A program made the translations under genes and the position numbers. Below the pieces are notes generated by a model. The model was not told where the DNA came from. It ran no database searches and worked only from the letters and a program-made list of their open reading frames with translations. This document shows positions 1 to 53,008 of a stretch of 64,000 nt of DNA, piece after piece. Origin of the DNA: Octopus bimaculoides (lineage: Eukaryota); assembly GCF_001194135.2 (NCBI RefSeq), contig NC_068984.1, positions 17,489,391 through 17,553,390 of the forward strand, in the 5' to 3' direction. The first letter of the stretch is position 1, and each line of letters starts with the position of its first letter.

Positions 1-379
1 GACATCATAGGCTTCAGACTTGTTGGAATTAAAATGAGACGACAAGCAGTGGCAGACGACACAAAAAAAAAAATCTGTGCAAGGGAAGCAACACGAGTTG
101 TTGCATCCCTTTCGGTGTAGTATTTTAGCATTTTTTTCTGATAAAAATGCCACAAAAACAATTTTTTTCTAGTAAGAGCTGATACTAAATAGTTTTAGAT
201 GCTAATAAATACTTATACGCTTAGATTAAGTTTCTGTCAATTCGCAATACCTATGATATATATAATCTTACCTTGTTATGTGACACTTACATAGGAAAAG
301 GGAAGCAAGTTGACATTCTGCTTCCATCAGAAAAACGGTGAAATGATAACACGCCTAGTTTTCTGTGTTTATTCAACTG

Positions 380-850
380 ATGTTTTATACTTTTTCAAAT
401 TACAGAACACCTTTTGTTTTGTTCATTGTATGGCCCATAGATTAAATCTAGTTCTGTCTCAAGCGGCTGCAAATATTCAAGTTTTTGTCACAGATAAAGC
501 CTTTTTCGTTATTTTTTTGTAAGTCGACCAAACGCGTGCATCTCTATTAGATACTGAAATTAAAAAGCGTTTTTCCAAAAGTGGTGCCAACTCGCTGGAA
601 CTTGAATCATTTGTTGGTAGAAACAGTTCGTAAATATCATGAGCAACTTGCTGATTTATTCCTAAACATCATTGATAATTCAAGTAAATGGGACACGGAA
701 AGCTATATCTATGCTCAGGCGATGTATTCTAATTTACAAAATTGTGAATTCAATTTTTTGTTAAATGTGTTTGGAGATATTTTTATTTTTTACCTATGGA
801 CCTCTTTGATTTGTATTTTACGCAGGTGGAACCTCCGAGCCATTTGATGT
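380..850 (+). mobile_element. Degenerate hAT transposase relic (ZMYM1-like)
   Basis: FVHCMAHRLNLVLSQ (CxAHxLNL motif), then PTRWN (hAT TRW motif) and NFLLNVFGDIF in a shifted frame; broken by frameshifts and deletions. A weak hAT-like end (ggacctcagatgagaac) lies near 1021-1037. Confidence 0.75.
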
Positions 851-3385: not shown

Positions 3386-3496
3386 ATCAGTAGGTGAATT
3401 ACAGACAGATATGGATTAATGATGAGAATGTTTAGTTTAATCAATAATATTGATGATAAACGCCTGAGATTTCTTTGGGTTATAATTATACAAAGT

Positions 3497-3882
3497 GGAG
3501 GCACAATGGCCTAGTGGTTAGGGCAGCGGACTCGTGGTCATAGGATCGCGGTTTCAATTCCCAGACCGGGCGTTGTGAGTGTTTATTGAGCGAAAACACC
3601 TAAAGCTCCACGAGGCTCCGGCAGGGAATGGTGGCGAACCCTGCTGTATTCTTTCACCACAACTTTCTTTCATTCTTTCTTCCTGTTTCTGTTGTACCTG
3701 TATTTCAAAGGGCCAGCCTTGTCACATTGTATCATGCTGAATATCCCAGAGAACTATGTTAAGGGTACACGTGTCTGTGGAGTGCTCAGCCACTTGCACG
3801 TTAATTTCACGAGCAGGCTGTTCCATTGATTGGATCAACTGGAACCCTTGACGTCGTAAACGACGGAGTGCCAACAACAAAA
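3497..3882 (+). mobile_element. SINE family D, full-length tRNA-derived
   Basis: Box A tggcctagtggtt and box B ggtttcaattccc; head shared with 22716, tail shared with 42925; ends in (aac)n. Confidence 0.85.
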
Positions 3883-6385: not shown

Positions 6386-7107
6386 ATGCGTAAGACAGTA
6401 TGATGACCTGTTTAGAAGAATTGTCATTCCAAAATAATTCCATGATTCAAGGTAGAGAAGGATTTGTATCTGGGAAGCCAACCTCTGTATTACCATTGCA
6501 TACATCTTTCTGTCTGGTCTGTTCCAACAGAATGCTTAGGGGGCAAGGCAAGAAGTGCATCCAACCATAAAATGTAAGTTAAATGAAACATTCCAAACAG
6601 TTATTTATACATCATAACTTACTGACCATCATTGGTAACCTCTCTGGGTCAAGGATGGTTATTCACCAGATTCATCTTCAATGGGCTTATAGGCCAGTGT
6701 GGCTATATGTGGCCCCATGTGGCTATATATAGGCTACCTGTGGCTATGTATGGCTACATATAGGCCAGTATGGGACTCATGTCACAAACAGGCAATTTCG
6801 AGTTCTGTGAGAGAATAGACTCTGTTTCTGATGATTAATAGTTTCATATGTTGAGAAATACCTCAAACATATTCATCAGGTAGAAGCCACATATCATAAT
6901 GGACTAAAAATTGAATGAGAGAAGAAACATGAAAAGTTGAGAAGGAAGTATATAAAATAATGCAGAAGGTTAAAAAGCTGCTAAGTTGGCTAGCCACTTG
7001 TGGAGTTTAAAATCTAATGCAACACCACATGTGATTAAGTGGAAAATAACTGAAAAATCCACACCTTATGTTAATGGATCAAATAAATGTAAGCCAAATG
7101 TGACAAA

Positions 7108-7525
7108 AGGTGTCTCAGTATCCTTAGTCACATTTAGTGATGATTGAATATTTCTTTTATAGTATTATATTGTGCTTAGCTGTTTATATTAAATCTTTGT
7201 ATACATCTTAGCATTCATAGATTTCTATGGTAAATACATATATGCTGACTGACGGAATTAGCCGACACCAGCCGATTGAGTGGTTTTCACTGACGAAGCA
7301 TACGGAAATATCTGAAACTAGATGTCTAGTCTGAGAGATTCTCAATTCGGTCGTGGAACAGTTTCTTCCCCTGTCAGCATGTGTGTATACATTTGCGCTC
7401 TTCCTACATCACAAGGAGTATTTTACTCCTATTTCTAGTAATGTAGGTGTCTTGGCATCATTAGTCACATTTAGTGATGACTGAATTTTTCCTTTAAGAT
7501 ATTATATTGCACTTGGCTATATATA
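7108..7525 (+). mobile_element. 337-bp terminally redundant unit carrying a hammerhead ribozyme (retrozyme or Penelope pLTR-like)
   Basis: Direct repeats 7108-7189 and 7445-7526 (about 82% identical by eye, offset 337 bp) bracket the HHR and a long enclosing hairpin 7234-7388. Confidence 0.7.
7271..7351 (+). ncRNA. Type I hammerhead ribozyme motif
   Basis: CUGACGA 7290-7296; stem II AG(C)AUA/UAUCU; GAAA 7314-7317; stem III ACUAG/CUAGU with AUGU loop; GUC cleavage triplet ending 7331; extended stem I 7271-7289 pairs with 7332-7351 around an internal loop. Confidence 0.8.
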
Positions 7526-8413
7526 TAGCCAATTGCATGTTTGTCTCACTGCCAAACCAGCTCTAGGACTATGCTACACACTGTCAAGGGGTTTTAAGCA
7601 GAATGATCGAGAATGTCATGGAAATGAAACTTTAATATAGTTTATGAGGGTATTTTCTGGATTATGAATGTATGAATGTTAGAAAAGGAAGATGAGAAAC
7701 TATATGTTAAATTTAGTTAGGAGAGAGAAAGTAGCAGGAGTTTTGGCAATGTATAATAGCATAAGGCTGACAAACCAAATATTCATTTCAAAGAAATGTA
7801 TTGGAAATAATCTGGGTTTTCTGTCTTGCTTTCAGTGTTATTGAAAAGGAGACAAATAATTATCATTATTAGAGTTTAATGGACAAGGGAAAAATCACGA
7901 GATTGAGAAGATTAATTCTTGGTAGAGCCTGTAGAAAGCTCAAACTGTGAAGATCAGTATAGCAAGGGTGAATAAAAGAATTGAGAAGAGGGATTTAGTG
8001 AAAGCTGTATGTTCATCAAGAGTAGTTGCAAAGACAAGTATGTAATCTACGGATGAGTTGTTGCTGTTACTGATTGTGTGGCCCTATAATCAAAGGTGTT
8101 TCAGCCGTAGTCACTATGGTTTAATGGAGGTCTGACAGCTTTTTCTAGCAGGTTAAATGACTCTCAGTGATTTAAGAGGCTTCCACTTTGGAAACGTAAG
8201 TAAACACCTATACATCTGAAAACAACATAGGAAAAACAAAGGAAAAGAAAAACAATACAAAACAAAATATGTTAATGCTTAGGGTGTTAATGATATATCT
8301 ATATCTATACATATATATATATATATATGTAAAGAATAAAAAGTTTTGAATAGTACAACAGTGCACTATAATACACAATGCTTCAAGCAAACTACAATAC
8401 TCTCCTATATATA

Positions 8414-9242
8414 NNNNNNNNNNNNNNNNNNNNNNNNNNNNNNNNNNNNNNNNNNNNNNNNNNNNNNNNNNNNNNNNNNNNNNNNNNNNNNNNNNNNNNN
8501 NNNNNNNNNNNNNNNNNNNNNNNNNNNNNNNNNNNNNNNNNNNNNNNNNNNNNNNNNNNNNNNNNNNNNNNNNNNNNNNNNNNNNNNNNNNNNNNNNNNN
8601 NNNNNNNNNNNNNNNNNNNNNNNNNNNNNNNNNNNNNNNNNNNNNNNNNNNNNNNNNNNNNNNNNNNNNNNNNNNNNNNNNNNNNNNNNNNNNNNNNNNN
8701 NNNNNNNNNNNNNNNNNNNNNNNNNNNNNNNNNNNNNNNNNNNNNNNNNNNNNNNNNNNNNNNNNNNNNNNNNNNNNNNNNNNNNNNNNNNNNNNNNNNN
8801 NNNNNNNNNNNNNNNNNNNNNNNNNNNNNNNNNNNNNNNNNNNNNNNNNNNNNNNNNNNNNNNNNNNNNNNNNNNNNNNNNNNNNNNNNNNNNNNNNNNN
8901 NNNNNNNNNNNNNNNNNNNNNNNNNNNNNNNNNNNNNNNNNNNNNNNNNNNNNNNNNNNNNNNNNNNNNNNNNNNNNNNNNNNNNNNNNNNNNNNNNNNN
9001 NNNNNNNNNNNNNNNNNNNNNNNNNNNNNNNNNNNNNNNNNNNNNNNNNNNNNNNNNNNNNNNNNNNNNNNNNNNNNNNNNNNNNNNNNNNNNNNNNNNN
9101 NNNNNNNNNNNNNNNNNNNNNNNNNNNNNNNNNNNNNNNNNNNNNNNNNNNNNNNNNNNNNNNNNNNNNNNNNNNNNNNNNNNNNNNNNNNNNNNNNNNN
9201 NNNNNNNNNNNNNNNNNNNNNNNNNNNNNNNNNNNNNNNNNN
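8414..9242. other. Assembly gap (N run)
   Basis: Ns. Other gaps: 12196-12205, 22169-22305, 30015-30024, 31198-31276, 33034-33043, 37888-38301, 43376-43475, 44268-44661, 45288-45297. Confidence 1.
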
Positions 9243-10754: not shown

Positions 10755-10920
10755 TTGGTTTAAAATTTCAGCACAAAACCAGCTATTTTGGGGAGCAGGT
10801 AAGTTGATTACAGCTGTCCACGTGTTCAACTGGTACTTATTTTATTGACCCTGAAAGGATCACATGCAAAGTCAACCTTAGCAGAATTTGAACTCAGAAT
10901 GTAAAGATGGATGTAATGTC
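10755..10920 (-). mobile_element. SINE family B, diverged
   Basis: ctggtacttattttattgaccctgaaagga..gcaaagtcaacc..gaatttgaactcagaa (rc of B body and box B). Confidence 0.8.
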
Positions 10921-10927
10921 TACAATA

Positions 10928-11334
10928 TTTACTCTTTTACTCTTTTACTTGTTTCAGTCATTTGACTGTGGCCATACTGGAGCACCGCCTTTTAGTTGAG
11001 CAAACCGACCCCAGGACTTATTCTTTGTAAGCCTAGTACTTATTTTATCGGTCTCTTATGCCGAACCTCTAAGTCATGGGGACGTAAACACACCACCATC
11101 GGTTGTCAAGCAATGTTGGTGGGGACAAACGCAGACACACAAACACACACATATATATATGCATATATACGACGGGCTTCTTTCAGTTTCTGTCTACCAA
11201 ATCCACTCACAAGGCTTTGGTTGGCCCGAGGCTATAGTAGAAGACACTTGCCCAAGGTGCCATGCAGTGGGACTGAATCCGGAACCATGTGGTTGGTAAG
11301 CAAGCCACTTACCACACAGCCACTCCTGCGCCTA
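10928..11334 (-). mobile_element. SINE family A, full-length
   Basis: Near-consensus copy with (TA/CA) spacer; head ends cctgcgccta. Confidence 0.92.
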
Positions 11335-11394
11335 TTATTATTACAAAATATTTATTAGCTGCTGTCATTAATTAACTCAAACAAACATATAATT

Positions 11395-13927: not shown

Positions 13928-14119
13928 GTCTAATGAGTTTTAACACTGCTCCACATGAATCGGTTCTGCCTCAAGCACACTGGGTTTTAATGAACTTTAA
14001 CCCTTTTGACCCCACAGGATGCCTGGGACCACTCCTGGTTCGATGATACAAACTTTCTGTTTTAGTGATTTGAATTAAAACATTTACATCAAAATTTCAT
14101 GTTAATTTATGTTAATTTA

Positions 14120-14686
14120 TTCTTTTACTTGTTTCAGTCATTTGACTGTGGCCATGCTGGAGCACCGCCTTTAGTCGAGCAAATCGACCCCAGGACTTAG
14201 TCTTTGTAAGCCTAGTACTTATTCTATCGGTCTCTCTTGTTGAACTGCTAAGTTACGGGGATGTAAACACACCAGCATCGGTTGTCAAGTGATGTTTGGG
14301 GGACAAACACAGACACACAAACATATACACACACATACATACATATATATATATATATACATATATACGAGTGGTTGGCATTAGGAAGGGCATCCAGCTG
14401 TAGAAACTCTGCCAGATCAGATTGGATCCTGGTGTAGCCATCTGGTTCGCCAGTCCCCAGTCAACTCATCCAATCCATGCTAGCATGGAAAGCGGACGTT
14501 AAATGATGATGACGATGATGATGATGATGATGATGATGATGGACTTCATTCAGTTTCCGTCTACCAAATCCACTCACAAGGCTTTGGTCGGCCTGAAGCT
14601 ATAGTGGAAGACACTTGCCCAAGGTGCCACGCAGTGGGAATGAACCCAGAACCACGTGGTTGGTAAGCAAGCTGCTCCTGCACCTA
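14120..14686 (-). mobile_element. SINE family A interrupted by a family C insertion
   Basis: A tail half 14120-14368 and head half 14540-14686; flanking atgttaattta duplication. Confidence 0.88.
14370..14540 (+). mobile_element. Repeat family C (RTE-related, (GAT)n tail), 5'-truncated, nested in A
   Basis: ggttggcattaggaagggcatccagctgtagaaac..catggaaagcggacgttaaatgatgatga. Confidence 0.88.
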
Positions 14687-16225: not shown

Positions 16226-16234
16226 AAATAAACA

Positions 16235-16407
16235 TAGGCGTAGGAGTGGTTGTGTGGTAAGTAGCTTGCTTACCGACCACATGGTTCTGGGTTCAGTCCC
16301 ACTGCGTGGCACCTTGGGCAAGTGTCTCCTATAATAGCCTCGGGCCGACCAAAGCCTTGTGAGTGGATTTGGTAGACAGAAACTGAAAGAAGCCCATCGT
16401 ATACATG

Positions 16408-16472
<65 letters not shown>

Positions 16473-16675
16473 TTTTGTGTCTGTGTTTGTCCCCCCAACA
16501 TCGCTTGACAACCGATGCTGGTGTGTTTGTGTCCCCGTAACTTAGCGGTTCGGCAAAAGAGAGCCAATATAATAAGTACTAGGCTTACAAAGAATAAGTT
16601 GTGGGGTCGATTTGCTCGACTAAAGGCGGTGCTCCAGCATGGCCACAGTCAAATGACTGAAACAAGTAAAAGAGA
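16235..16675 (+). mobile_element. SINE family A, full-length
   Basis: taggcgtaggagtggttgtgtggtaag..gggttcagtcccactgcgtggcaccttgggcaagtgt..gactgaaacaagtaaaagag. Confidence 0.93.
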
Positions 16676-17789
16676 TATAAATAATAAAAAAGTAAAATGG
16701 TTGTGAAGTCAGTGTATTACAAGATGGAGAAAAATAGTGATGTTAATATTTTGGGCAATATGTCCTTTGTCAAGATTGGTTGAAAAAGAAAATTTCTTGG
16801 GAAAAGGCATAGTAGATAATGTTGAAATTGAAATAAGCAGAGGATGATGGTTACTGGAAGAGGAGAGTGACAAGGCAGTTAGTGAACATCAATCATACAT
16901 AGAAAGAAATAGAATGATTAGCTGAGAGTAAGTCTGTATGCATGCACAAATACATTTATGTATTGCATGTATGCATTCATATGTATATGTGTGTGTATGT
17001 ATAAGTGCATGTATGCATGTATATATGTTTGTATTTATGCTTGTATGTGTGTGGTTAGGAGAGAGTTTGATAATATGTATGCATGACTGGGGGATTAACA
17101 GGGTAAGTAACAGCAAAATGAAGTGTGTGTGTGTGTGTGTGTATGTGTGTGTGTAAGAATATGATGAAGTGAGTTTGTTCAAGGAAAATGTGGGTTGGAT
17201 TGGAAGAAATGTAAGTTACAAATGATGGAGTACTCAAGGGATCAGGTGATGGTAAAATAGATGGTGAGGAGGAAGAGAACGACGCTGATAATCTGGTAGG
17301 TGCTGAGGAAAGGGAGCAGAAGAAAATTCAGTAGTTAGCGCATAATACTGGGCTGCTTTGATGGCTAGTTGAGGATAACGCTGTCAAAGAACAAGTGAAT
17401 CCTTTAGTGGGATTTAGCTTGGATGTCAGAGTTTTAGCTATAGAGGAAGCAGAGACACATAAATCATAAGTAGGAGTAAGTGTGAATGGGGTGATATGAG
17501 GAGACATTGAGGAACCGGTGAATCAGCAGATTTAGGAAAGATGTTGGGTAAGAGGATGGAATGGTTAATTGAAACAGATGAAGACATTAAGAAAAACATT
17601 AAAGGTGGTATTTTGTGAATTATAAAAAAAGATGAAAGGTGTTGACAAAGGTAATACGAGAAATAAGTTGTTTGTGGGTTACTAGCTTAACTCTGAGTAA
17701 AGTCTCAATAAAGGGACCATTTTTGTCTGTAATATGGTTTCCCTCAACCTGCCATCTATGCACCCTTAACCCATGTTTTTTCTGTATCT

Positions 17790-25899: not shown

Positions 25900-26270
25900 A
25901 TACCAGCGTCGCCTTACTGGCACTTGTGCCAGTGGCACATTAGAAAACATTTGAGCGAGGTCATTGCCAGTGCCACTGGACTGGCTCCTGTGCAGGTGGC
26001 ATGTAAAAAACACCATTTTGAGTGTGGCCATTGCCAGTACCGCCTGACTGGCCCTCGTGCCGGTGGCACGTAAAAGCACCCACTAAACTCTCGGAGTGGT
26101 TGGCGTTAGGAAGGGTATCCAGTTGTAGAAACTCTGCCATATCAGATTGGAGCCTGGTGCAGCCATCTAGTTCACCAGTTCTCAGTCAAATAGTCCAACT
26201 CATGCTAGCATGGAAAGCGGACGTTAAACGATGATGACGATGATGATGATCATGGTCATGATGATGATGA
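25900..26270 (+). mobile_element. Repeat family C, long form with three 5' tandem units
   Basis: Three ~62-67-bp units gccag..actggc..gtgcc..gtggca..aaaa, then the ggaagggtatcc body and (GAT)n tail. Confidence 0.9.
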
Positions 26271-27989: not shown

Positions 27990-28145
27990 TAGATGTTGAT
28001 TGTGGTAAGCAGCTTGCTTACCAACCACATGGTTCTGGGTTCAGTCCCACTGCGTGACACTTTGGGCAAGTGTCTTCTATTATAGCCTCGGGCCAACCAA
28101 AGCCTTGTAAGTGCATTTGGTAGACGGAAACTGAAAGAAACCCGT

Positions 28146-28242
<97 letters not shown>

Positions 28243-28454
28243 ATATGTTTGCCCCCCTCACCTCAACATCACTTGACAACTGATGTTGGTGTGTTTGTGC
28301 CTCCGTAACTTAGCAGTTCGGCAAAAGGGAACAATAGAATAAGTACTTGGCTTACAAAGAATAAGCCCTAAGGTCGATTTGCTTGATTGAAGGCAGTGCT
28401 CCAGCATAGCCGCAGTCAAATAATAACTGAAACAAGTAAAAGAGTAGAAGAGTA
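27990..28454 (+). mobile_element. SINE family A, full-length
   Basis: Head, (TA)n spacer and tail present; inverted relative to 26850-27325. Confidence 0.92.
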
Positions 28455-29409: not shown

Positions 29410-29715
29410 ACACACATAAAACATCCGAGTGAGGTCATTGCCAGTGCTGCTGGACTGGCTCCTGTGCAGGTGGCATGTAAAAACACCATTTTGAGCGTGG
29501 ACCTTGCCAGTACCGCCTGACTGACCCTCGTGCCGGTGGCACGTAAAAGCACCCACTATACTCTCAGAGTGGTTGGCATTACGAAGGGCATCCAGCTGTA
29601 GAAACTCTGCCAGATCAGATTGGAGCCTGGTGCAGCCATCTGGTTCGCCAGTCCCCAGTCAAATCGTCCAACCCATGCTAGCATGGAAAGCAGACGTTAA
29701 ATGATGATGGTGATA
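29410..29715 (+). mobile_element. Repeat family C
   Basis: Two 5' units, body and tail. Confidence 0.9.
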
Positions 29716-31017: not shown

Positions 31018-31197
31018 AATGTGCAGGTTTGGCTGTGTGGTAAGAAGTTTGCTTTCCAACCACTTGGTTCTGGTTCAAACTCACTGCATGGCACCTTGGG
31101 CAAGTGACTTCTATTATAGCCCCTGACTGACCAAAGCCTTGTGAGTGGATTAGGTAGAGGGAATCTGAAAAAAGGCTGTTGTATATATATATATATA
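31018..31197 (+). mobile_element. SINE family A head half (repeated again at 31277-31426 across the gap)
   Basis: ggctgtgtggtaagaagtttgc..ccttgggcaagt..aaagccttgtgagtggatt. Confidence 0.85.
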
Positions 31198-31426
31198 NNN
31201 NNNNNNNNNNNNNNNNNNNNNNNNNNNNNNNNNNNNNNNNNNNNNNNNNNNNNNNNNNNNNNNNNNNNNNNNNNNNTGCTTTCCAACCACTTGGTTCTGG
31301 TTCAAACTCACTGCATGGCACCTTGGGCAAGTGGCTTCTATTATAGCCCCTGACTGACCAAAGCCTTGTGAGTGGATTAGGTAGAGGGAATCTGAAAAAA
31401 GGCTGTTGTATATATATATATATATA

Positions 31427-45169: not shown

Positions 45170-45640
45170 CATCATCATTGTTGTTATCAACGCCACCACC
45201 ACCACTCCTTCTGCCACCATCCCCATCACCACCACTACCAAAACCATACCCACCACCACCACCATCACTACTACTGCCACCACCATCNNNNNNNNNNCAC
45301 CACCACCATTACTGCCACCACCACCACCACTACTGCCACCACCATCATCACTACCACTACCATACCACCACCACCACCACCACCTCCACTACTGCCACCA
45401 CTATCATCACTACTACCGCTACCACCACTACCAAAATCATACCCACCACCACCACTACCACTACTGCCACCACCATCACTACCACTACTGCCACCACCAT
45501 CACCACTACTACCACCATCACCATCATCATCCCTACTACCGCTAACACCATCACCACCACTGCTGATGCCACCCCACAATCACCACCACCACCACTACCA
45601 CCACCATAACTTTCGTCATCCTCGTCATTATTATTGTCAT
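45170..45640. repeat. (CAC/CAT/ACT)n low-complexity tract
   Basis: Direct read; internal block accactaccaaaa(c/t)catacccaccacc is duplicated. Confidence 0.9.
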
Positions 45641-45769: not shown

Positions 45770-45990
45770 GTTGCCAGTGCCACCTGACTGGCCCTTGTGC
45801 TGGTGGCACGTAAAAGCACCCACTACACTCTCGGAGTGGTTGGCATTAGGAAGGGCATCCAGCTGTAGAAACTCTGCCAGATCAGATTGAAGCTTGGTGC
45901 AGCCATCTGGTTCACCAGTTCTCGGTTAAATCGTCCAACCCATGCTAGCATGGAAAGCGGATGTTAAATGATGATGATGATGATGATGAT
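45770..45990 (+). mobile_element. Repeat family C
   Basis: One 5' unit, body and (GAT)n tail. Confidence 0.9.
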
Positions 45991-46699: not shown

Positions 46700-47042
46700 G
46701 TTAGTCGAGCAAATCGATCCCACGACTTATCCTTTGTAAGCCTAGTACTTATTCTATCGGTCTCTATTGCTGAACCGCTAAGTTACGGGGACGTATATAC
46801 AGCAGCATTGGTTGTCAAGCGATATTGGAGGGGGGGGGGCAAACACAGACACTCACACACATACACAAACACATATATGATGGTTTTCTTTTAGTTTCCA
46901 TCTATCAAATCCACTCACAAGGCTTTGCTCGGCCCAAGGCTATAGTAGAAGACACTTGCCCAAGGTGCCATGCAGTGGGACTGAACCCAGAACCATGTGG
47001 TTTGTAAGCAAGCTACTTACCACACAGCCACTCCTACGACTA
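46700..47042 (-). mobile_element. SINE family A
   Basis: ttagtcgagcaaatcga..cacaaggctttg..accacacagccactcct. Confidence 0.9.
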
Positions 47043-47173
47043 TACTTAAACAATACAGGATGGCCACGGCTGAAATTCTTTTGAGAATAAATCTCCTTGA
47101 TCAGAACTAACATAAAACTAAACAGCAACAATAACAACGATTATTATTATATAGCTTTTATATATTATACAAC

Positions 47174-47219
<46 letters not shown>

Positions 47220-47386
47220 GCTTTTATCTTTTACTTGCTTCAGTAATTAGTGAGAACTCAGATAATGAAATTACAATGGACATTGCTGCATCTTTAGTCA
47301 ATGTTTTCTGTTCCCTGATAATGCAATATCTGATTCATATCCTAATCTTGACAAAAATGTTTTGGAAAATTGTGTTAAGAATATAT

Positions 47387-47598
47387 GTATTATACTTGGT
47401 TAAGATGTAAGTATTATACTTGGTTAAGATGTAAGTATTATACTTGGTTAAAATGTAAGTATTATATTTGGTTAAGATGTAAGTATTATACTTGGTTAAA
47501 ATGTAAGTATTATACTTGGTTAAAATGTAAGTATTATACTTGGTTAAAATGTAAGTATTATACTTGGTTAAGATGTAAGTATTATACTTGGTTAAAAT
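47387..47598. repeat. 24-bp minisatellite (gtattatacttggttaa[g/a]atgtaa), about 9 copies
   Basis: Direct read; gives the YYTWL(R/K)CK repeat ORF. Confidence 0.95.
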
Positions 47599-49484: not shown

Positions 49485-49835
49485 ATGATGATGATGATCA
49501 TCATCGTTTAACGTCCGCCTGCCATGCTAGCATGGGTTGGATGATTTGACTGGGGACTGGCGAACCAGATGGCTGCACCAGGCTCCAATCTGATCTGGCA
49601 GAATTTCTACAGCTGGATGCCCTTCCTAACGCCAACCACTCTGAGAGTGTAGTGGGTGCTTTTACGTGCCACCGGCATGAAGGTCAGTCAGGCGGTACTG
49701 GCAATGGCCATGCTCAAAATGGTGTATTTTACGTGCCACCTGCACAGGAGCCAGTCCAGCGGCACTGGTAACGCCCTCGCTTGAATGTTCTTTTATGTGC
49801 CACTGGCACAAGTGCCAGTAAGGCGACACTGGTAT
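49485..49835 (-). mobile_element. Repeat family C, long form
   Basis: rc of 25900-26270 along its full length. Confidence 0.92.
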
Positions 49836-50125: not shown

Positions 50126-50784
50126 AAAGAATATTCTCCCTAAGAATTACATTTCACAACACCTTCTGATTTTTGGTGTCATAGACCATGCTTAACCTCC
50201 GTACATTAACACAGGGTAGACATAGCAGTTCAATATACAGAACTTGTGCCCAGAGTATGGTTTCTGAAGATGTTTTACAATTTTCAGAATGCAGATTTTG
50301 CCAACACTATTTGTCTTGGGAAAGAACACTGCATTTAATTCGCCTTTTCACAATGCATCTGCATTAATTATGATACTCATGCAGCTACTTTAATTTAATA
50401 CTGCTTCCGTTGCATATAACTGATTTTTATTCAGCCCGGTGGCAAATTGCAGCATCAGTGAGTTTTTTCAATTACTGTTTCCCTATATTAATAGTAACAG
50501 ATTTTGTCTTAGCACGTGGCTGACAGTAAATACATGCTTCTATGCTTCTGACAAAGTTCAATGAGGCAGAAATGCACATCTAGCATTCTCACTGCCACAG
50601 TTTGACAATAATCATCTGCTACTAATATATTTGTGCTTAAAAATACAGTCAGTCCATAAGATATATTTTCTCCAGATGAACACTGTTGCTAATTTGCTTT
50701 TATACAATGTATTTACATCAAATATTATGCACAGAATTTACACAAAAGTGTGTAATACATCAAAAGTATATAACACATCAAGTA

Positions 50785-51105
50785 TTACTCTTTTACTTGT
50801 TTCAGTCATTTGACTGTGGCCATGCTGGAGCACCGCCTTTAGTCAAGCAAATCAACCCCAGGACTTATTCTTTGTAAGCCTAGTACTTATTCTATCGGTT
50901 TCTTTTGCCGAACCGCTAAGTTACGGGGACGTAAGCACATCAGCACCGGTTGTAAAGTGATGTTGGGAGGACAAACACAGACACACAAACATATACACAC
51001 ACATACATGTATATATATATACGACGGGCTTCTTTCAGTTTCTGTTTACCAAATCCACTCACAAGGCTTTGGTCGGCCCGAAGCTATAGTAGAAGACACT
51101 TACCC
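50785..51105 (-). mobile_element. SINE family A lacking the tRNA head
   Basis: Near-consensus tail and body, ending at agaagacactta. Confidence 0.9.
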
Positions 51106-51719
51106 ACTTGTGTTTAATGATCTATAATGTTCCACTGTTCTAAGTTAGTAGCAGCAGGAAAGATTTCCAGAAGACTGACATACTGGGAACAAATGACTGA
51201 ATGTAGGAGAAGCATGGGGTAGTGTGAGGCTGGAAACCATATAAGGGCAAGAAATGAAGAAATGACTGAGTTAACGGTGCTGGAAGGAGAGACGGCACAT
51301 AATTAGCAGAGGCAAAAAGGCCATTGTAGCTGTGGTAGAAAAGACAGAGAAAGAGAGAGGGAGAGAGAGAAGACAGCCTATTACTGGGTAAGAGATTAAA
51401 GTGTGTTTGTTAGTGACTTCTTTTCAATTGGTTGAAATATTTTCAGCCGTGTGTCTATGTGTGTAACAGCACCACCACCACCCCACTGTTCCATTGGAAA
51501 AAGTATTTTCTGGCTCTGAGGAGGAAGGTCGGAAGGTTTGAACTCATAACCTTATAGTTCATAGTCCACTGATTTCTTATTATCTATCTAACCAAGAAGA
51601 ATGATGACTTAATGTGAAAGCATTATGGCTTTTCTTTTTTAATCTAGACAGATGTGATGTGAGAGTTTTGGCTGCTATTTCTAGCACGTCATACAACCCT
51701 ACAGAGGGATCCTTGCTGG

Positions 51720-52205
51720 ATCAAGTAGTAGTGGTGGTGATGAAAGCTGTGATGATGATGATGATGATAATGACAATGATGATAATGGTGGTAATGGAGG
51801 TGGTGATGATGATGATGATGATGATGGTGGTGGAGGTAGTGATGATGATGGTGGTGGAGGTGGTGATGATAATGATGATGATGACGATGATGATGGTGGT
51901 GGAGGTGGTGATGATGATGATAATGATGACGATAATGATGGTGGAGGTGGTGATGATGACGACGATGATGATGATGTTGATGATAATGATGTTGATGATG
52001 ATGATGATGATGATAGGAGTGGTGGTGATGATGATGATGATGATGATGATAGGAGTGGTGATGATGACGATGATGATGATGATGGTGATGGTGGTAGTGT
52101 TGACGACAATAGTTGTGGTTATGATGATGGTAGTAGAGATGATACTGATGACGATGATGATGATGATGATGATGATAGCTGCTGCAGCAGCAGCAGCAGC
52201 GATGA
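51720..52205. repeat. (GAT/GGT)n low-complexity tract
   Basis: Direct read; source of the poly-M/H/S ORFs. Confidence 0.93.
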
Positions 52206-52624
52206 TTGCTATTTCTGGTCCAGGGCATCATGGTACGCTTCATAGTTGAAGGCTGTAATAAAAAATGAAACATCTTTCCACTTACACTTGGAATGCTTTT
52301 ACCAAATAAAATATGATTCTAGGCAACTGTCTCTCATTACAGAAATTTATTTAGCTACAATTTAGAAACAATTACCTCCATAAGTTTGACAAGAAAGTAC
52401 TCCGGGTCATGTCTTGAAGTAGTGAAATACAGCAACAACAGCAACAACAACAACAATGGAAAAATCTCTTTGGTCACATCATTCTGACAGCACTTCATTA
52501 GCTGTGAACATAGACACAATGAAAACTATGTCCTTGAACTTTCTTACTGAGTTCCCAGACCGACAGAACAAAAATGATTCACTCAACTTTACTAACTTCA
52601 CGTCACCGTCAAGCTTTAGCCATA

Positions 52625-53008
52625 TTACTCTTTTACTTGTTTCAGTCATTTGACTGCAGCCATGCTGGAGCACCACCTTTTGTCGAACAAATCGACCCCA
52701 GGACTTATTCTTTGTAAGCCTAGTACTTATTCTATCGGTCTCTTTTGCCGAGCCGCTAAGTTGCGGGGACGTAAACACACCAGTGTCGGTTGTCAAGCGA
52801 TGTTGTGGGGACAAACACAGACACACACACATATATATATACATATATACGACGGGTTTCTTTCAGTTTCCGTCTACCAAATCCACTCACAAGGCTTTGG
52901 TCGGCCCGAGGCTATAGTAGAAGACACTTGTCCAAGGTGCCACGCAGTGGGATTGAACCCGGAACCATGTGGTTGGTAAGCAAGCTATTTACCACACAGC
53001 CACTCCTG
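52625..53008 (-). mobile_element. SINE family A, full-length, young
   Basis: CpG-rich near-consensus copy. Confidence 0.93.

What the first reader, a model, noticed from the sequence alone, without database searches (positions are those of the whole stretch)
7108..7525. Complete type I hammerhead ribozyme inside a 337-bp terminally redundant, rod-folding unit (retrozyme-like)
Seen: CUGACGA (7290-7296), a short stem II with one bulged C, GAAA (7314-7317), stem III ACUAG-AUGU-CUAGU and a GUC site, giving predicted cleavage after 7331. Stem I is long: 7284-7289 pairs with 7332-7337 and 7271-7280 with 7341-7351 around an internal loop. An outer helix (7234-7249 with 7373-7388, 16 bp including G-U) closes a rod. 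The block lies between ~82-bp direct repeats offset by 337 bp, and several of their differences look like CpG decay (CA versus TG). Established: type I HHRs in 170-400-nt tandem units define metazoan non-LTR retrozymes that give circular RNAs, and Penelope pseudo-LTRs also carry HHRs with terminal redundancy. Inference: this is an old 1.25-unit copy of a cephalopod retrozyme or PLE-pLTR family. I cannot tell whether the family has been described.
Basis: partly seen in the sequence, partly recalled or inferred. Interest (0 to 1): 0.85.

Follow-up and report, generated by a model that had tools for sequence, protein, structure and literature searches.

The report
Lone hammerhead-ribozyme repeat relic in octopus DNA
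A small self-cutting RNA motif (hammerhead ribozyme) sits at the tip of a long hairpin inside a 337-base partly duplicated unit. It is most likely one worn copy of a known kind of small mobile repeat, not a new kind of element, and its activity and family membership are untested.

Summary

The motif is not a chance match:
- At its own stringency, no permuted-core decoy (0/719) and no shuffled window (0/400) gives a hit.
- The pairing beyond helix I (−44.1 kcal/mol) exceeds all 226 decoy hits and 99.7% of random sites.
- The fold favours the ribozyme strand.

It is still an atypical hammerhead:
- No Rfam hammerhead model reaches its threshold; the best is RAGATH-1 at 15.3 bits against 56.3.
- Helix II closes with A10.1–U11.1 instead of the highly conserved G–C, and it carries a bulge.
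- The hammerhead fold lies 4.3 kcal/mol above the MFE.

The locus has 1.24 units and one ribozyme, so it cannot release a circle. No second copy was found in the window or in 20.7 kb of Octopus vulgaris, and none was reachable elsewhere. No reverse-transcriptase remnant lies nearby.

Best reading (about 0.55): a solitary, decayed monomer of a retrozyme-like or hammerhead-satellite repeat in an octopus genome. This would be a new member of a known kind, of moderate interest.

The parts
7108..7189 (+). Direct repeat, copy 1 (start of the 337-nt unit as preserved here)
   Evidence: 82 nt, 82% identical to 7445-7526, offset 337
7445..7526 (+). Direct repeat, copy 2 (the extra 0.24 unit, giving terminal redundancy)
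   Evidence: homology stops at 7526; 11 transitions and 4 transversions, two CA/TG pairs
7234..7388 (+). 155-nt imperfect hairpin (rod) with the hammerhead at its tip
   Evidence: MFE -53.3, z -4.0 to -4.7 on + strand against -43.4, z -2.5 on - strand; 7 G·U against 2 A·C. CpG o/e 0.94 against 0.35 for the window
7271..7289 (+). Helix I, 5' strand (distal 7271-7280, internal loop 7281-7283, proximal 7284-7289)
7290..7296 (+). Core box CUGACGA (C3 U4 G5 A6 C7 G8 A9)
7297..7313 (+). Helix II with loop 2 (A10.1-U11.1, bulged C7299, loop CGGAAA)
   Evidence: one added G between 7311 and 7312 would give a perfect 6-bp AGCAUA/UAUGCU stem
7314..7317 (+). Core box GAAA (G12 A13 A14 A15.1)
7317..7330 (+). 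Helix III, ACUAG-AUGU-CUAGU (5 bp including A15.1-U16.1)
7329..7331 (+). GUC triplet; predicted cleavage between 7331 and 7332
   Evidence: inference from the hammerhead consensus
7332..7351 (+). Helix I, 3' strand (proximal 7332-7337, loop 7338-7340, distal 7341-7351)

Best explanation
This is a solitary, decayed copy (1.24 units of 337 nt) of a small non-coding repeat that carries a type I hammerhead ribozyme. It is of the non-LTR retrozyme / hammerhead-satellite kind and lies in an octopus-type genome.

Inferred mechanism for the family:
- Multimeric or read-through transcripts fold so that helix I continues into a long self-paired arm.
- The hammerhead cuts after GUC (7331), leaving a 5'-OH and a 2',3'-cyclic phosphate.
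- A host RtcB-type ligase closes unit-length RNA into a circle.
- A reverse transcriptase supplied in trans (Penelope-like or LINE) copies the circle or multimer for more than one turn. This leaves a DNA copy with terminal redundancy, here the 82-nt repeats.

What is shown: the motif, its topology, its non-random nature, the strand-biased hairpin and the duplication. Everything in the mechanism is inferred.

This particular locus has a single ribozyme, so it can be cut at most once and cannot release a circle. Its helix II is weakened by A-U closure and a bulge that looks like a 1-nt deletion, so this copy is probably slow or inactive.
For: - Core, helices and coordinates verified.
- Chance expectation at the site's own stringency: 0/719 decoy cores and 0/400 shuffles; at a laxer level 0.003-0.0075 per window.
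- Flank pairing of -44.1 kcal/mol is beyond all 226 decoy hits and 99.7% of random sites.
- Helix I is 6 bp, then an internal loop, then a closing stem. That is the canonical metazoan type I layout (PMC4209133).
- The + strand folds 10 kcal/mol better than the - strand, with 7 G·U against 2 A·C.
- Unit size of 337 nt and GC of 36% fall within the published retrozyme ranges of 170-400 nt and GC below 45-50%. Mussel units are 350-390 bp (PMC7229834).
- The intact ribozyme spans the cleavage site inside the copy, so the template was uncut or circular (inference).
- Monomeric derivatives of retrozymes are common (bioRxiv 10.64898/2026.07.22.740005).
- Adding one G restores a 6-bp helix II and makes the three-way fold the MFE.
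- Hammerhead_1 hits are reported in a cephalopod genome: 235 in giant squid (PMC6962438).
Against: - No Rfam hammerhead family reaches threshold. Hammerhead_1 and Hammerhead_3 give no hit even at E<=10 in an 88-nt search, and the best is RAGATH-1 at 15.3 bits against 56.3.
- A10.1-U11.1 replaces the most conserved helix pair (PMC3088659).
- Helix II is AU-rich with a bulge, and the hammerhead fold is 4.3 kcal/mol above the MFE.
- There is only one ribozyme and 1.24 units.
- No other copy exists in the 64-kb window, in 20.7 kb of O. vulgaris or in any reachable collection.
- No target-site duplication (p 0.25) and no A-tail.
- About 3-5% of the window lies between local direct repeats anyway.
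- The unit outside the hairpin is not rod-like.
Confidence: 0.55

Rival explanations
1. Chance hammerhead-like motif. An inverted repeat (foldback or MITE-like DNA, or a random palindrome) happens to carry CUGANGA...GAAA...GUC in its apical loop, and an unrelated local duplication lies around it. No ribozyme ancestry or activity.
For: - The motif is information-poor, and chance matches are expected in large genomes (PMC3088659).
- A lax descriptor already gives one obvious chance hit, at 6828-6877, in this same window.
- Rfam models reject the site.
- Helix II is weak and non-canonical.
- No relatives were found.
- The finding was selected from a scan of an unknown number of windows.
Against: - Joint rarity: the descriptor gives <0.0025 per window at its own stringency. 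The flank pairing is reached by 0.28% of random sites. About 4% of the window lies between direct repeats. Together these give a very rough 0.01-0.3 expected per multi-gigabase genome.
- Strand bias of the fold and of the wobble pairs.
- The 6-bp helix I followed by a loop was not part of the descriptor.
- CpG is retained in the hairpin.
Confidence: 0.22
2. Fragment of a Penelope-like element: a solo or truncated pseudo-LTR that carries the element's hammerhead, with the partial tandem typical of Penelope insertions.
For: - Pseudo-LTRs arise from partial tandems and carry type I hammerheads (PMC4209133, PMC8557442).
- Retrozymes are argued to derive from pseudo-LTRs, so the two classes overlap.
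- Penelope elements are annotated in cephalopod genomes (PMC6962438).
- A 15-nt inverted duplication (7508-7537) lies at the 3' boundary, and Penelope insertions often carry adjacent inverted copies.
Against: - Open segments of at least 50 aa between 3.5 and 12 kb show no RT or GIY-YIG Pfam match.
- The ribozyme lies outside the duplicated 82 nt, not within the repeat.
- Metazoan Penelope hammerheads have no helix III or one of 1-2 bp, conserve G10.1-C11.1 and have an extra base after A9 (PMC4209133). None of these holds here.
Confidence: 0.12
3. A single-copy, host-retained (domesticated) hammerhead or other structured RNA in an intron or intergenic region. Examples would be a hammerhead like the amniote intronic ones, a box C/D snoRNA, or a microRNA-type hairpin.
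For: - CpG o/e is 0.94 in the hairpin against 0.35 in the window, while the flanking repeats show CpG decay.
- The unit is single-copy in 85 kb.
- The fold is strand-biased.
- There are weak box C/D snoRNA-like matches through UGACGA and CUGA.
Against: - The snoRNA matches score 9.5-14.8 bits against thresholds of 43-50.
- The hairpin is far longer and more irregular than a microRNA precursor.
- CpG richness is reached by about 4% of GC-matched windows.
- No orthologous sequence was available to test conservation.
Confidence: 0.08

Closest known systems
Metazoan non-LTR retrozymes (Cervera & de la Peña 2020, PMC7229834), e.g. Mytilus galloprovincialis 350-390-bp repeats
   Same: Type I hammerhead. 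Unit of a few hundred nt (337). Low GC (36%). No coding capacity. A self-paired RNA arm continuous with helix I. The host is a mollusc. The copy contains an uncut cleavage site, as expected from a circular or multimeric template.
   Different: Only 1.24 units and one ribozyme, instead of dimers to large multimers. No family copies were seen. Helix II closes with A-U and has a bulge. Helix III is 5 bp rather than the usual 1-2 bp. Rfam Hammerhead_1 does not match. Only about half the unit is strongly paired.
Penelope-like element pseudo-LTR hammerheads (Cervera & de la Peña 2014, PMC4209133)
   Same: Type I topology. Partial tandem giving terminal redundancy. Association with repeats in invertebrate genomes.
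   Different: No RT/GIY-YIG ORF nearby. The ribozyme is not within the duplicated part. It has a stable 5-bp helix III, lacks G10.1-C11.1, and has no extra base between A9 and 10.1.
Hammerhead-bearing satellites and SINE-like repeats (Schistosoma Sm-alpha, newt satellite 2, Dolichopoda pDo500; PMC2837043, PMC3088659)
   Same: Type I hammerhead embedded in a non-coding repeat of about 300-500 bp. Helix I is 6 bp followed by an internal loop.
   Different: Those occur in large arrays or thousands of copies with the canonical helix II. Here there is a single decayed unit with a variant helix II.
Single-copy intronic hammerheads of amniotes (e.g. C10orf118 intron; PMC3088659)
   Same: A lone type I hammerhead outside any array, thought to derive from retroelements.
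   Different: Those are conserved across species and match Rfam models. Conservation here could not be tested, and the Rfam match fails.

Membership tests
Hammerhead ribozyme, type I | Conserved core: C3 U4 G5 A6 N7 G8 A9, G12 A13 A14, A15.1-U16.1, H17 | tested here: met
   Read at 7290-7296, 7314-7317, 7330 and 7331. The cmscan alignment to RAGATH-1 places the same boxes.
Hammerhead ribozyme, type I | Three helices around the core, with helix I open and helices II and III closed by loops | tested here: met
   Helix I is 6 bp plus a 10-bp extension. Helix II is 5 bp with one bulge. Helix III is 5 bp. The constrained fold is -49.0 against an MFE of -53.3.
Hammerhead ribozyme, type I | G10.1-C11.1 closing pair of helix II, the most conserved pair after 15.1-16.1 | tested here: not met
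   A7297-U7313. Conservation is stated in PMC3088659 and PMC4209133. The pair is still Watson-Crick.
Hammerhead ribozyme, type I | Score at or above the curated threshold of an Rfam hammerhead model | tested here: not met
   No hit in the whole window at gathering score. None at E<=10 in 651 nt. Only RAGATH-1-hammerhead at 15.3 bits against 56.3, E 1.4, in 88 nt.
Hammerhead ribozyme, type I | Conservation of the core and compensatory changes in helices among relatives | tested here: inconclusive
   No relative was found in the window, in L002, in three DNA collections or in the protein databases.
Hammerhead ribozyme, type I | Site-specific self-cleavage | not testable with these tools
   Needs in vitro transcription and a cleavage assay.
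Non-LTR retrozyme | Tandem repeats (two or more units), each with a type I hammerhead | tested here: not met
   1.24 units and one hammerhead. Homology ends at 7526.
Non-LTR retrozyme | Unit of about 170-400 nt with low GC (<45-50%) | tested here: met
   337 nt, GC 36.2%. Ranges are from PMC7229834.
Non-LTR retrozyme | Unit RNA highly self-paired as a circle | tested here: inconclusive
   Circular fold gives z -3.2 to -3.4. The 155-nt arm is strongly paired and the rest is weakly structured.
Non-LTR retrozyme | Multi-copy family in the genome, expressed as circular RNA | not testable with these tools
   No eukaryotic genome or RNA-seq collection is searchable by DNA. There are zero extra copies in 64 kb plus 20.7 kb.
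Penelope-like element pseudo-LTR | Adjacent RT plus GIY-YIG ORF, with the hammerhead inside the repeated pseudo-LTR | tested here: not met
   No Pfam RT or GIY-YIG in open segments between 3.5 and 12 kb. The N run 8414-9242 and heavy decay limit this test. The hammerhead lies between the repeats, not within them.
Box C/D snoRNA | Match to a snoRNA model; C/D boxes with a short terminal stem | tested here: not met
   9.5-14.8 bits against thresholds of 43-50.

The most novel reading that the evidence does not exclude
Octopus genomes may harbour an undescribed hammerhead lineage with A10.1-U11.1, C7 and a stable 5-bp helix III, which curated models miss. It could exist as an active retrozyme family producing about 337-nt circular RNAs. 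Alternatively, this locus could be a host-retained single-copy ribozyme whose hairpin is protected from CpG decay.
Probability: 0.25. Interest if true: 0.55.

Novelty: new member of a known kind. Interest (0 to 1): 0.35.

Why it matters
If a family stands behind this copy, it would extend retrozyme-type circular-RNA elements to cephalopods. It would also show that a hammerhead variant with an A-U closing pair in helix II escapes the covariance models used for genome annotation. That would make a direct search for small circular RNAs in octopus tissues worthwhile. If the locus is alone, it is an ordinary relic and matters little.

Tried and rejected
- **Rfam:** searched at gathering score on the whole window and at E<=10 on 651-nt and 88-nt stretches. 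No usable hammerhead hit. L002 was also empty.
- **Second descriptor hit, 6828-6877:** rejected. CTGATGA pairs with TCATCAG around another palindrome, and helix III is only 2 bp.
- **Other copies in the window:** none by blastn with word size 7 or by nhmmer.
- **Collection scans:** the 20-mer shared by both repeats and hammerhead-specific patterns were scanned against the metagenome, prokaryotic-genome and viral collections. The only result was one chance hit in a prokaryotic coding region.
- **Spurious-ORF route to family copies:** the 66-aa minus-frame peptide gave nothing, or an unrelated repeat protein. Ten window ORFs are not in the protein collection.
- **SINE-derived ORF search:** no hits.
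- **Octopus vulgaris flank L002:** 20.7 kb fetched through a hAT remnant. It is not orthologous and holds no copy.
- **Target-site duplication:** AGCCAA upstream and downstream is not significant (p 0.25).
- **tRNA-derived SINE head:** none found.
- **Bacterial promoter/terminator scan:** irrelevant for a eukaryote.
- **Literature:** no paper on cephalopod retrozymes turned up.

Full report
**1. The observation**

- On the + strand, CUGACGA (7290-7296) follows a 6-bp helix I (7284-7289 / 7332-7337, two G·U).
- Helix II is A7297-U7313, G7298-C7312, a bulged C7299, then three A-U pairs around the loop CGGAAA.
- GAAA is at 7314-7317.
- Helix III is ACUAG-AUGU-CUAGU (7317-7330).
- The triplet G7329-U7330-C7331 puts the predicted cleavage after 7331.
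- Beyond a 3x3 internal loop, helix I continues (7271-7280 / 7341-7351).
- After further interrupted pairing, a 16-bp helix (7234-7249 / 7373-7388) closes a 155-nt hairpin.
- The direct repeats 7108-7189 and 7445-7526 are 82 nt, 82% identical and offset by 337 nt.
- Eleven of their 15 differences are transitions. Two are CA/TG dinucleotide pairs, as CpG decay would give.

**2. Is it more than chance?**

I wrote a descriptor that allows exactly the liberties this site needs: G·U pairs, and one bulge or mismatch in helix II.
- At helix I>=5, II>=4, III>=3 it finds only this site on both strands of the window.
- With the same descriptor and 719 permuted core boxes on the real sequence, 2 decoys hit at that level and none at the site's own level of 6/5/5.
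- Four hundred dinucleotide shuffles give 0.0075 and 0 hits per window.
- At a lax setting the real descriptor also hits 6828-6877. That site is a different palindrome (CTGATGA...TCATCAG) with a 2-bp helix III, and it shows what a chance hit looks like.

An independent feature is the pairing of the 55 nt on either side of helix I. It is -44.1 kcal/mol, stronger than for all 226 decoy hits and for 99.7% of random sites.

The hairpin folds better on the ribozyme strand: -53.3 kcal/mol (z -4.7) against -43.4 (z -2.5). It has 7 G·U against 2 A·C positions (one-sided binomial about 0.09).

About 3-5% of the window lies between local direct repeats of this type.

Taken together, and allowing for some dependence between these features, a chance origin is unlikely even on the scale of a multi-gigabase genome. 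The number of windows screened before this one is unknown, so I keep chance at about 0.2.

**3. What speaks against a working, canonical hammerhead**

- No Rfam hammerhead family matches. There is nothing at gathering score in the window and nothing at E<=10 in a 651-nt search.
- In an 88-nt search the only hit is RAGATH-1-hammerhead, at 15.3 bits against a threshold of 56.3. In that alignment helices I and III and both core boxes align, but helix II does not.
- The closing pair of helix II is A-U. G10.1-C11.1 is described as the most conserved pair after A15.1-U16.1 (PMC3088659) and as highly conserved in metazoan motifs (PMC4209133).
- The hammerhead fold is 4.3 kcal/mol above the MFE, which uses an alternative hairpin at 7308-7325.
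- The 3' strand of helix II (UAU-CU) is one G short of a perfect complement to AGCAUA. With that G added, the three-way hammerhead fold becomes the MFE. This fits a 1-nt deletion in an old copy, but it is a post hoc argument.

**4. Surroundings**

- The unit occurs once in the window.
- Homology between the repeats stops sharply at 7189/7526, so there are 1.24 units and a single ribozyme. The minus strand has no hammerhead.
- There is no significant target-site duplication, no A-tail and no tRNA-like head.
- There is no RT or GIY-YIG remnant in open segments between 3.5 and 12 kb. An N run at 8414-9242 limits that test.
- CpG is at expectation in the hairpin (o/e 0.94, 7 sites) against 0.35 for the window. 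About 4% of GC-matched windows are as rich.

**5. Source organism**

- A hAT-like remnant (295-844) finds a hypothetical protein of Octopus vulgaris.
- The 20.7 kb around that gene (L002, OX597818.1) shares many interspersed repeats with the window at 80-95% identity.
- L002 is not the orthologous region and holds no copy of the unit.

**6. Comparative evidence could not be obtained**

- The DNA collections on hand are prokaryotic, viral or metagenomic, and scans found nothing relevant.
- Attempts to reach family copies through spurious ORFs failed.
- The decisive test, family copies with a conserved core and covarying helices, therefore remains open.

**7. Interpretation**

The anatomy fits published non-LTR retrozymes (PMC7229834) in several ways:
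- a type I hammerhead;
- a unit of 170-400 nt;
- low GC;
- no coding capacity;
- a self-paired RNA;
- a mollusc precedent with 350-390-bp units.

Monomeric derivatives are reported as common. A copy longer than one unit that contains an uncut cleavage site is what reverse transcription of a circular or multimeric RNA would leave. That step is inference.

Two defining features are not met: tandem units each with a ribozyme, and a multi-copy family. The ribozyme also departs from the canonical metazoan type I layout of a 4-bp helix II with G-C closure and a 1-2-bp helix III (PMC4209133). I therefore call it retrozyme-like and do not file it as a member.

The Penelope pseudo-LTR reading is weaker. 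There is no ORF, the ribozyme lies outside the repeated part, and helix III is long. A recent preprint derives retrozymes from pseudo-LTRs, so the two readings are not fully separate.

**8. Novelty and verdict**

- Hammerhead repeats in molluscs and Rfam Hammerhead_1 hits in a cephalopod genome (235 in giant squid, PMC6962438) are already on record.
- I found no description of a cephalopod retrozyme family.
- The most this locus offers is a lead to a variant hammerhead lineage that standard models miss. By itself it is one worn copy that cannot release a circle.
- It is a new member of a known kind. Interest is 0.35, and confidence in the best explanation is 0.55.

Noticed in passing
window 295-844 (+): Remnant of a hAT-type transposase (HCMAHRLNL and PTRWN motifs). 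Bases 411-788 are 88% identical to Octopus vulgaris OX597818.1 (L002 9864-10250). The best protein hit is a hypothetical O. vulgaris protein.
   Followed up: partly
window 3493-3871, 10920-11352, 14115-14676, 16234-16694, 28001-28454, 46701-47044, 50783-51106, 52622-53007: Interspersed repeat of about 380-450 bp (SINE-like), 80-91% identical to several copies in the O. vulgaris locus L002. ARAGORN finds no tRNA-like head.
   Followed up: partly
window 31050-31197 and 31277-31424: Two 148-bp stretches, 99.3% identical, on either side of the N run 31198-31276. Probably an assembly duplication at a gap.
   Followed up: no
window 7508-7537: Zero-spacer palindrome (15-nt arms, 14/15 complementary). 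Its left arm is the end of the second 82-nt repeat. This inverted duplication sits exactly at the 3' boundary of the unit, and its origin is unexplained.
   Followed up: partly
window 6828-6877 (+): Lax hammerhead-descriptor hit (CTGATGA...GAAA, 2-bp helix III). It is really part of another palindrome, CTGATGA...TCATCAG, and I judge it a chance match.
   Followed up: yes
window 7234-7388: CpG is at expectation (o/e 0.94, 7 sites) in a window whose overall o/e is 0.35. Meanwhile the flanking 82-nt repeats show two inferred CpG decays. This could mean constraint, hypomethylation or a younger age than the repeat divergence suggests.
   Followed up: partly
window 25950-26075, 29469-29549, 45802-45816, 49659-49740: Repeat family carrying GGTGGCACGTAAAAR: 8 sites against 0.14 expected. 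At 25950-26075 it forms a 67-bp unit repeated 1.9 times.
   Followed up: no
window 47374-47595: 24-bp minisatellite, 9.2 copies, 95% matches.
   Followed up: no
window 45192-45606 and 51750-52176: Long imperfect trinucleotide arrays (CAC/CCA and TGA) that give long His-, Thr-, Pro- or Met-rich open frames. These are not genes.
   Followed up: no
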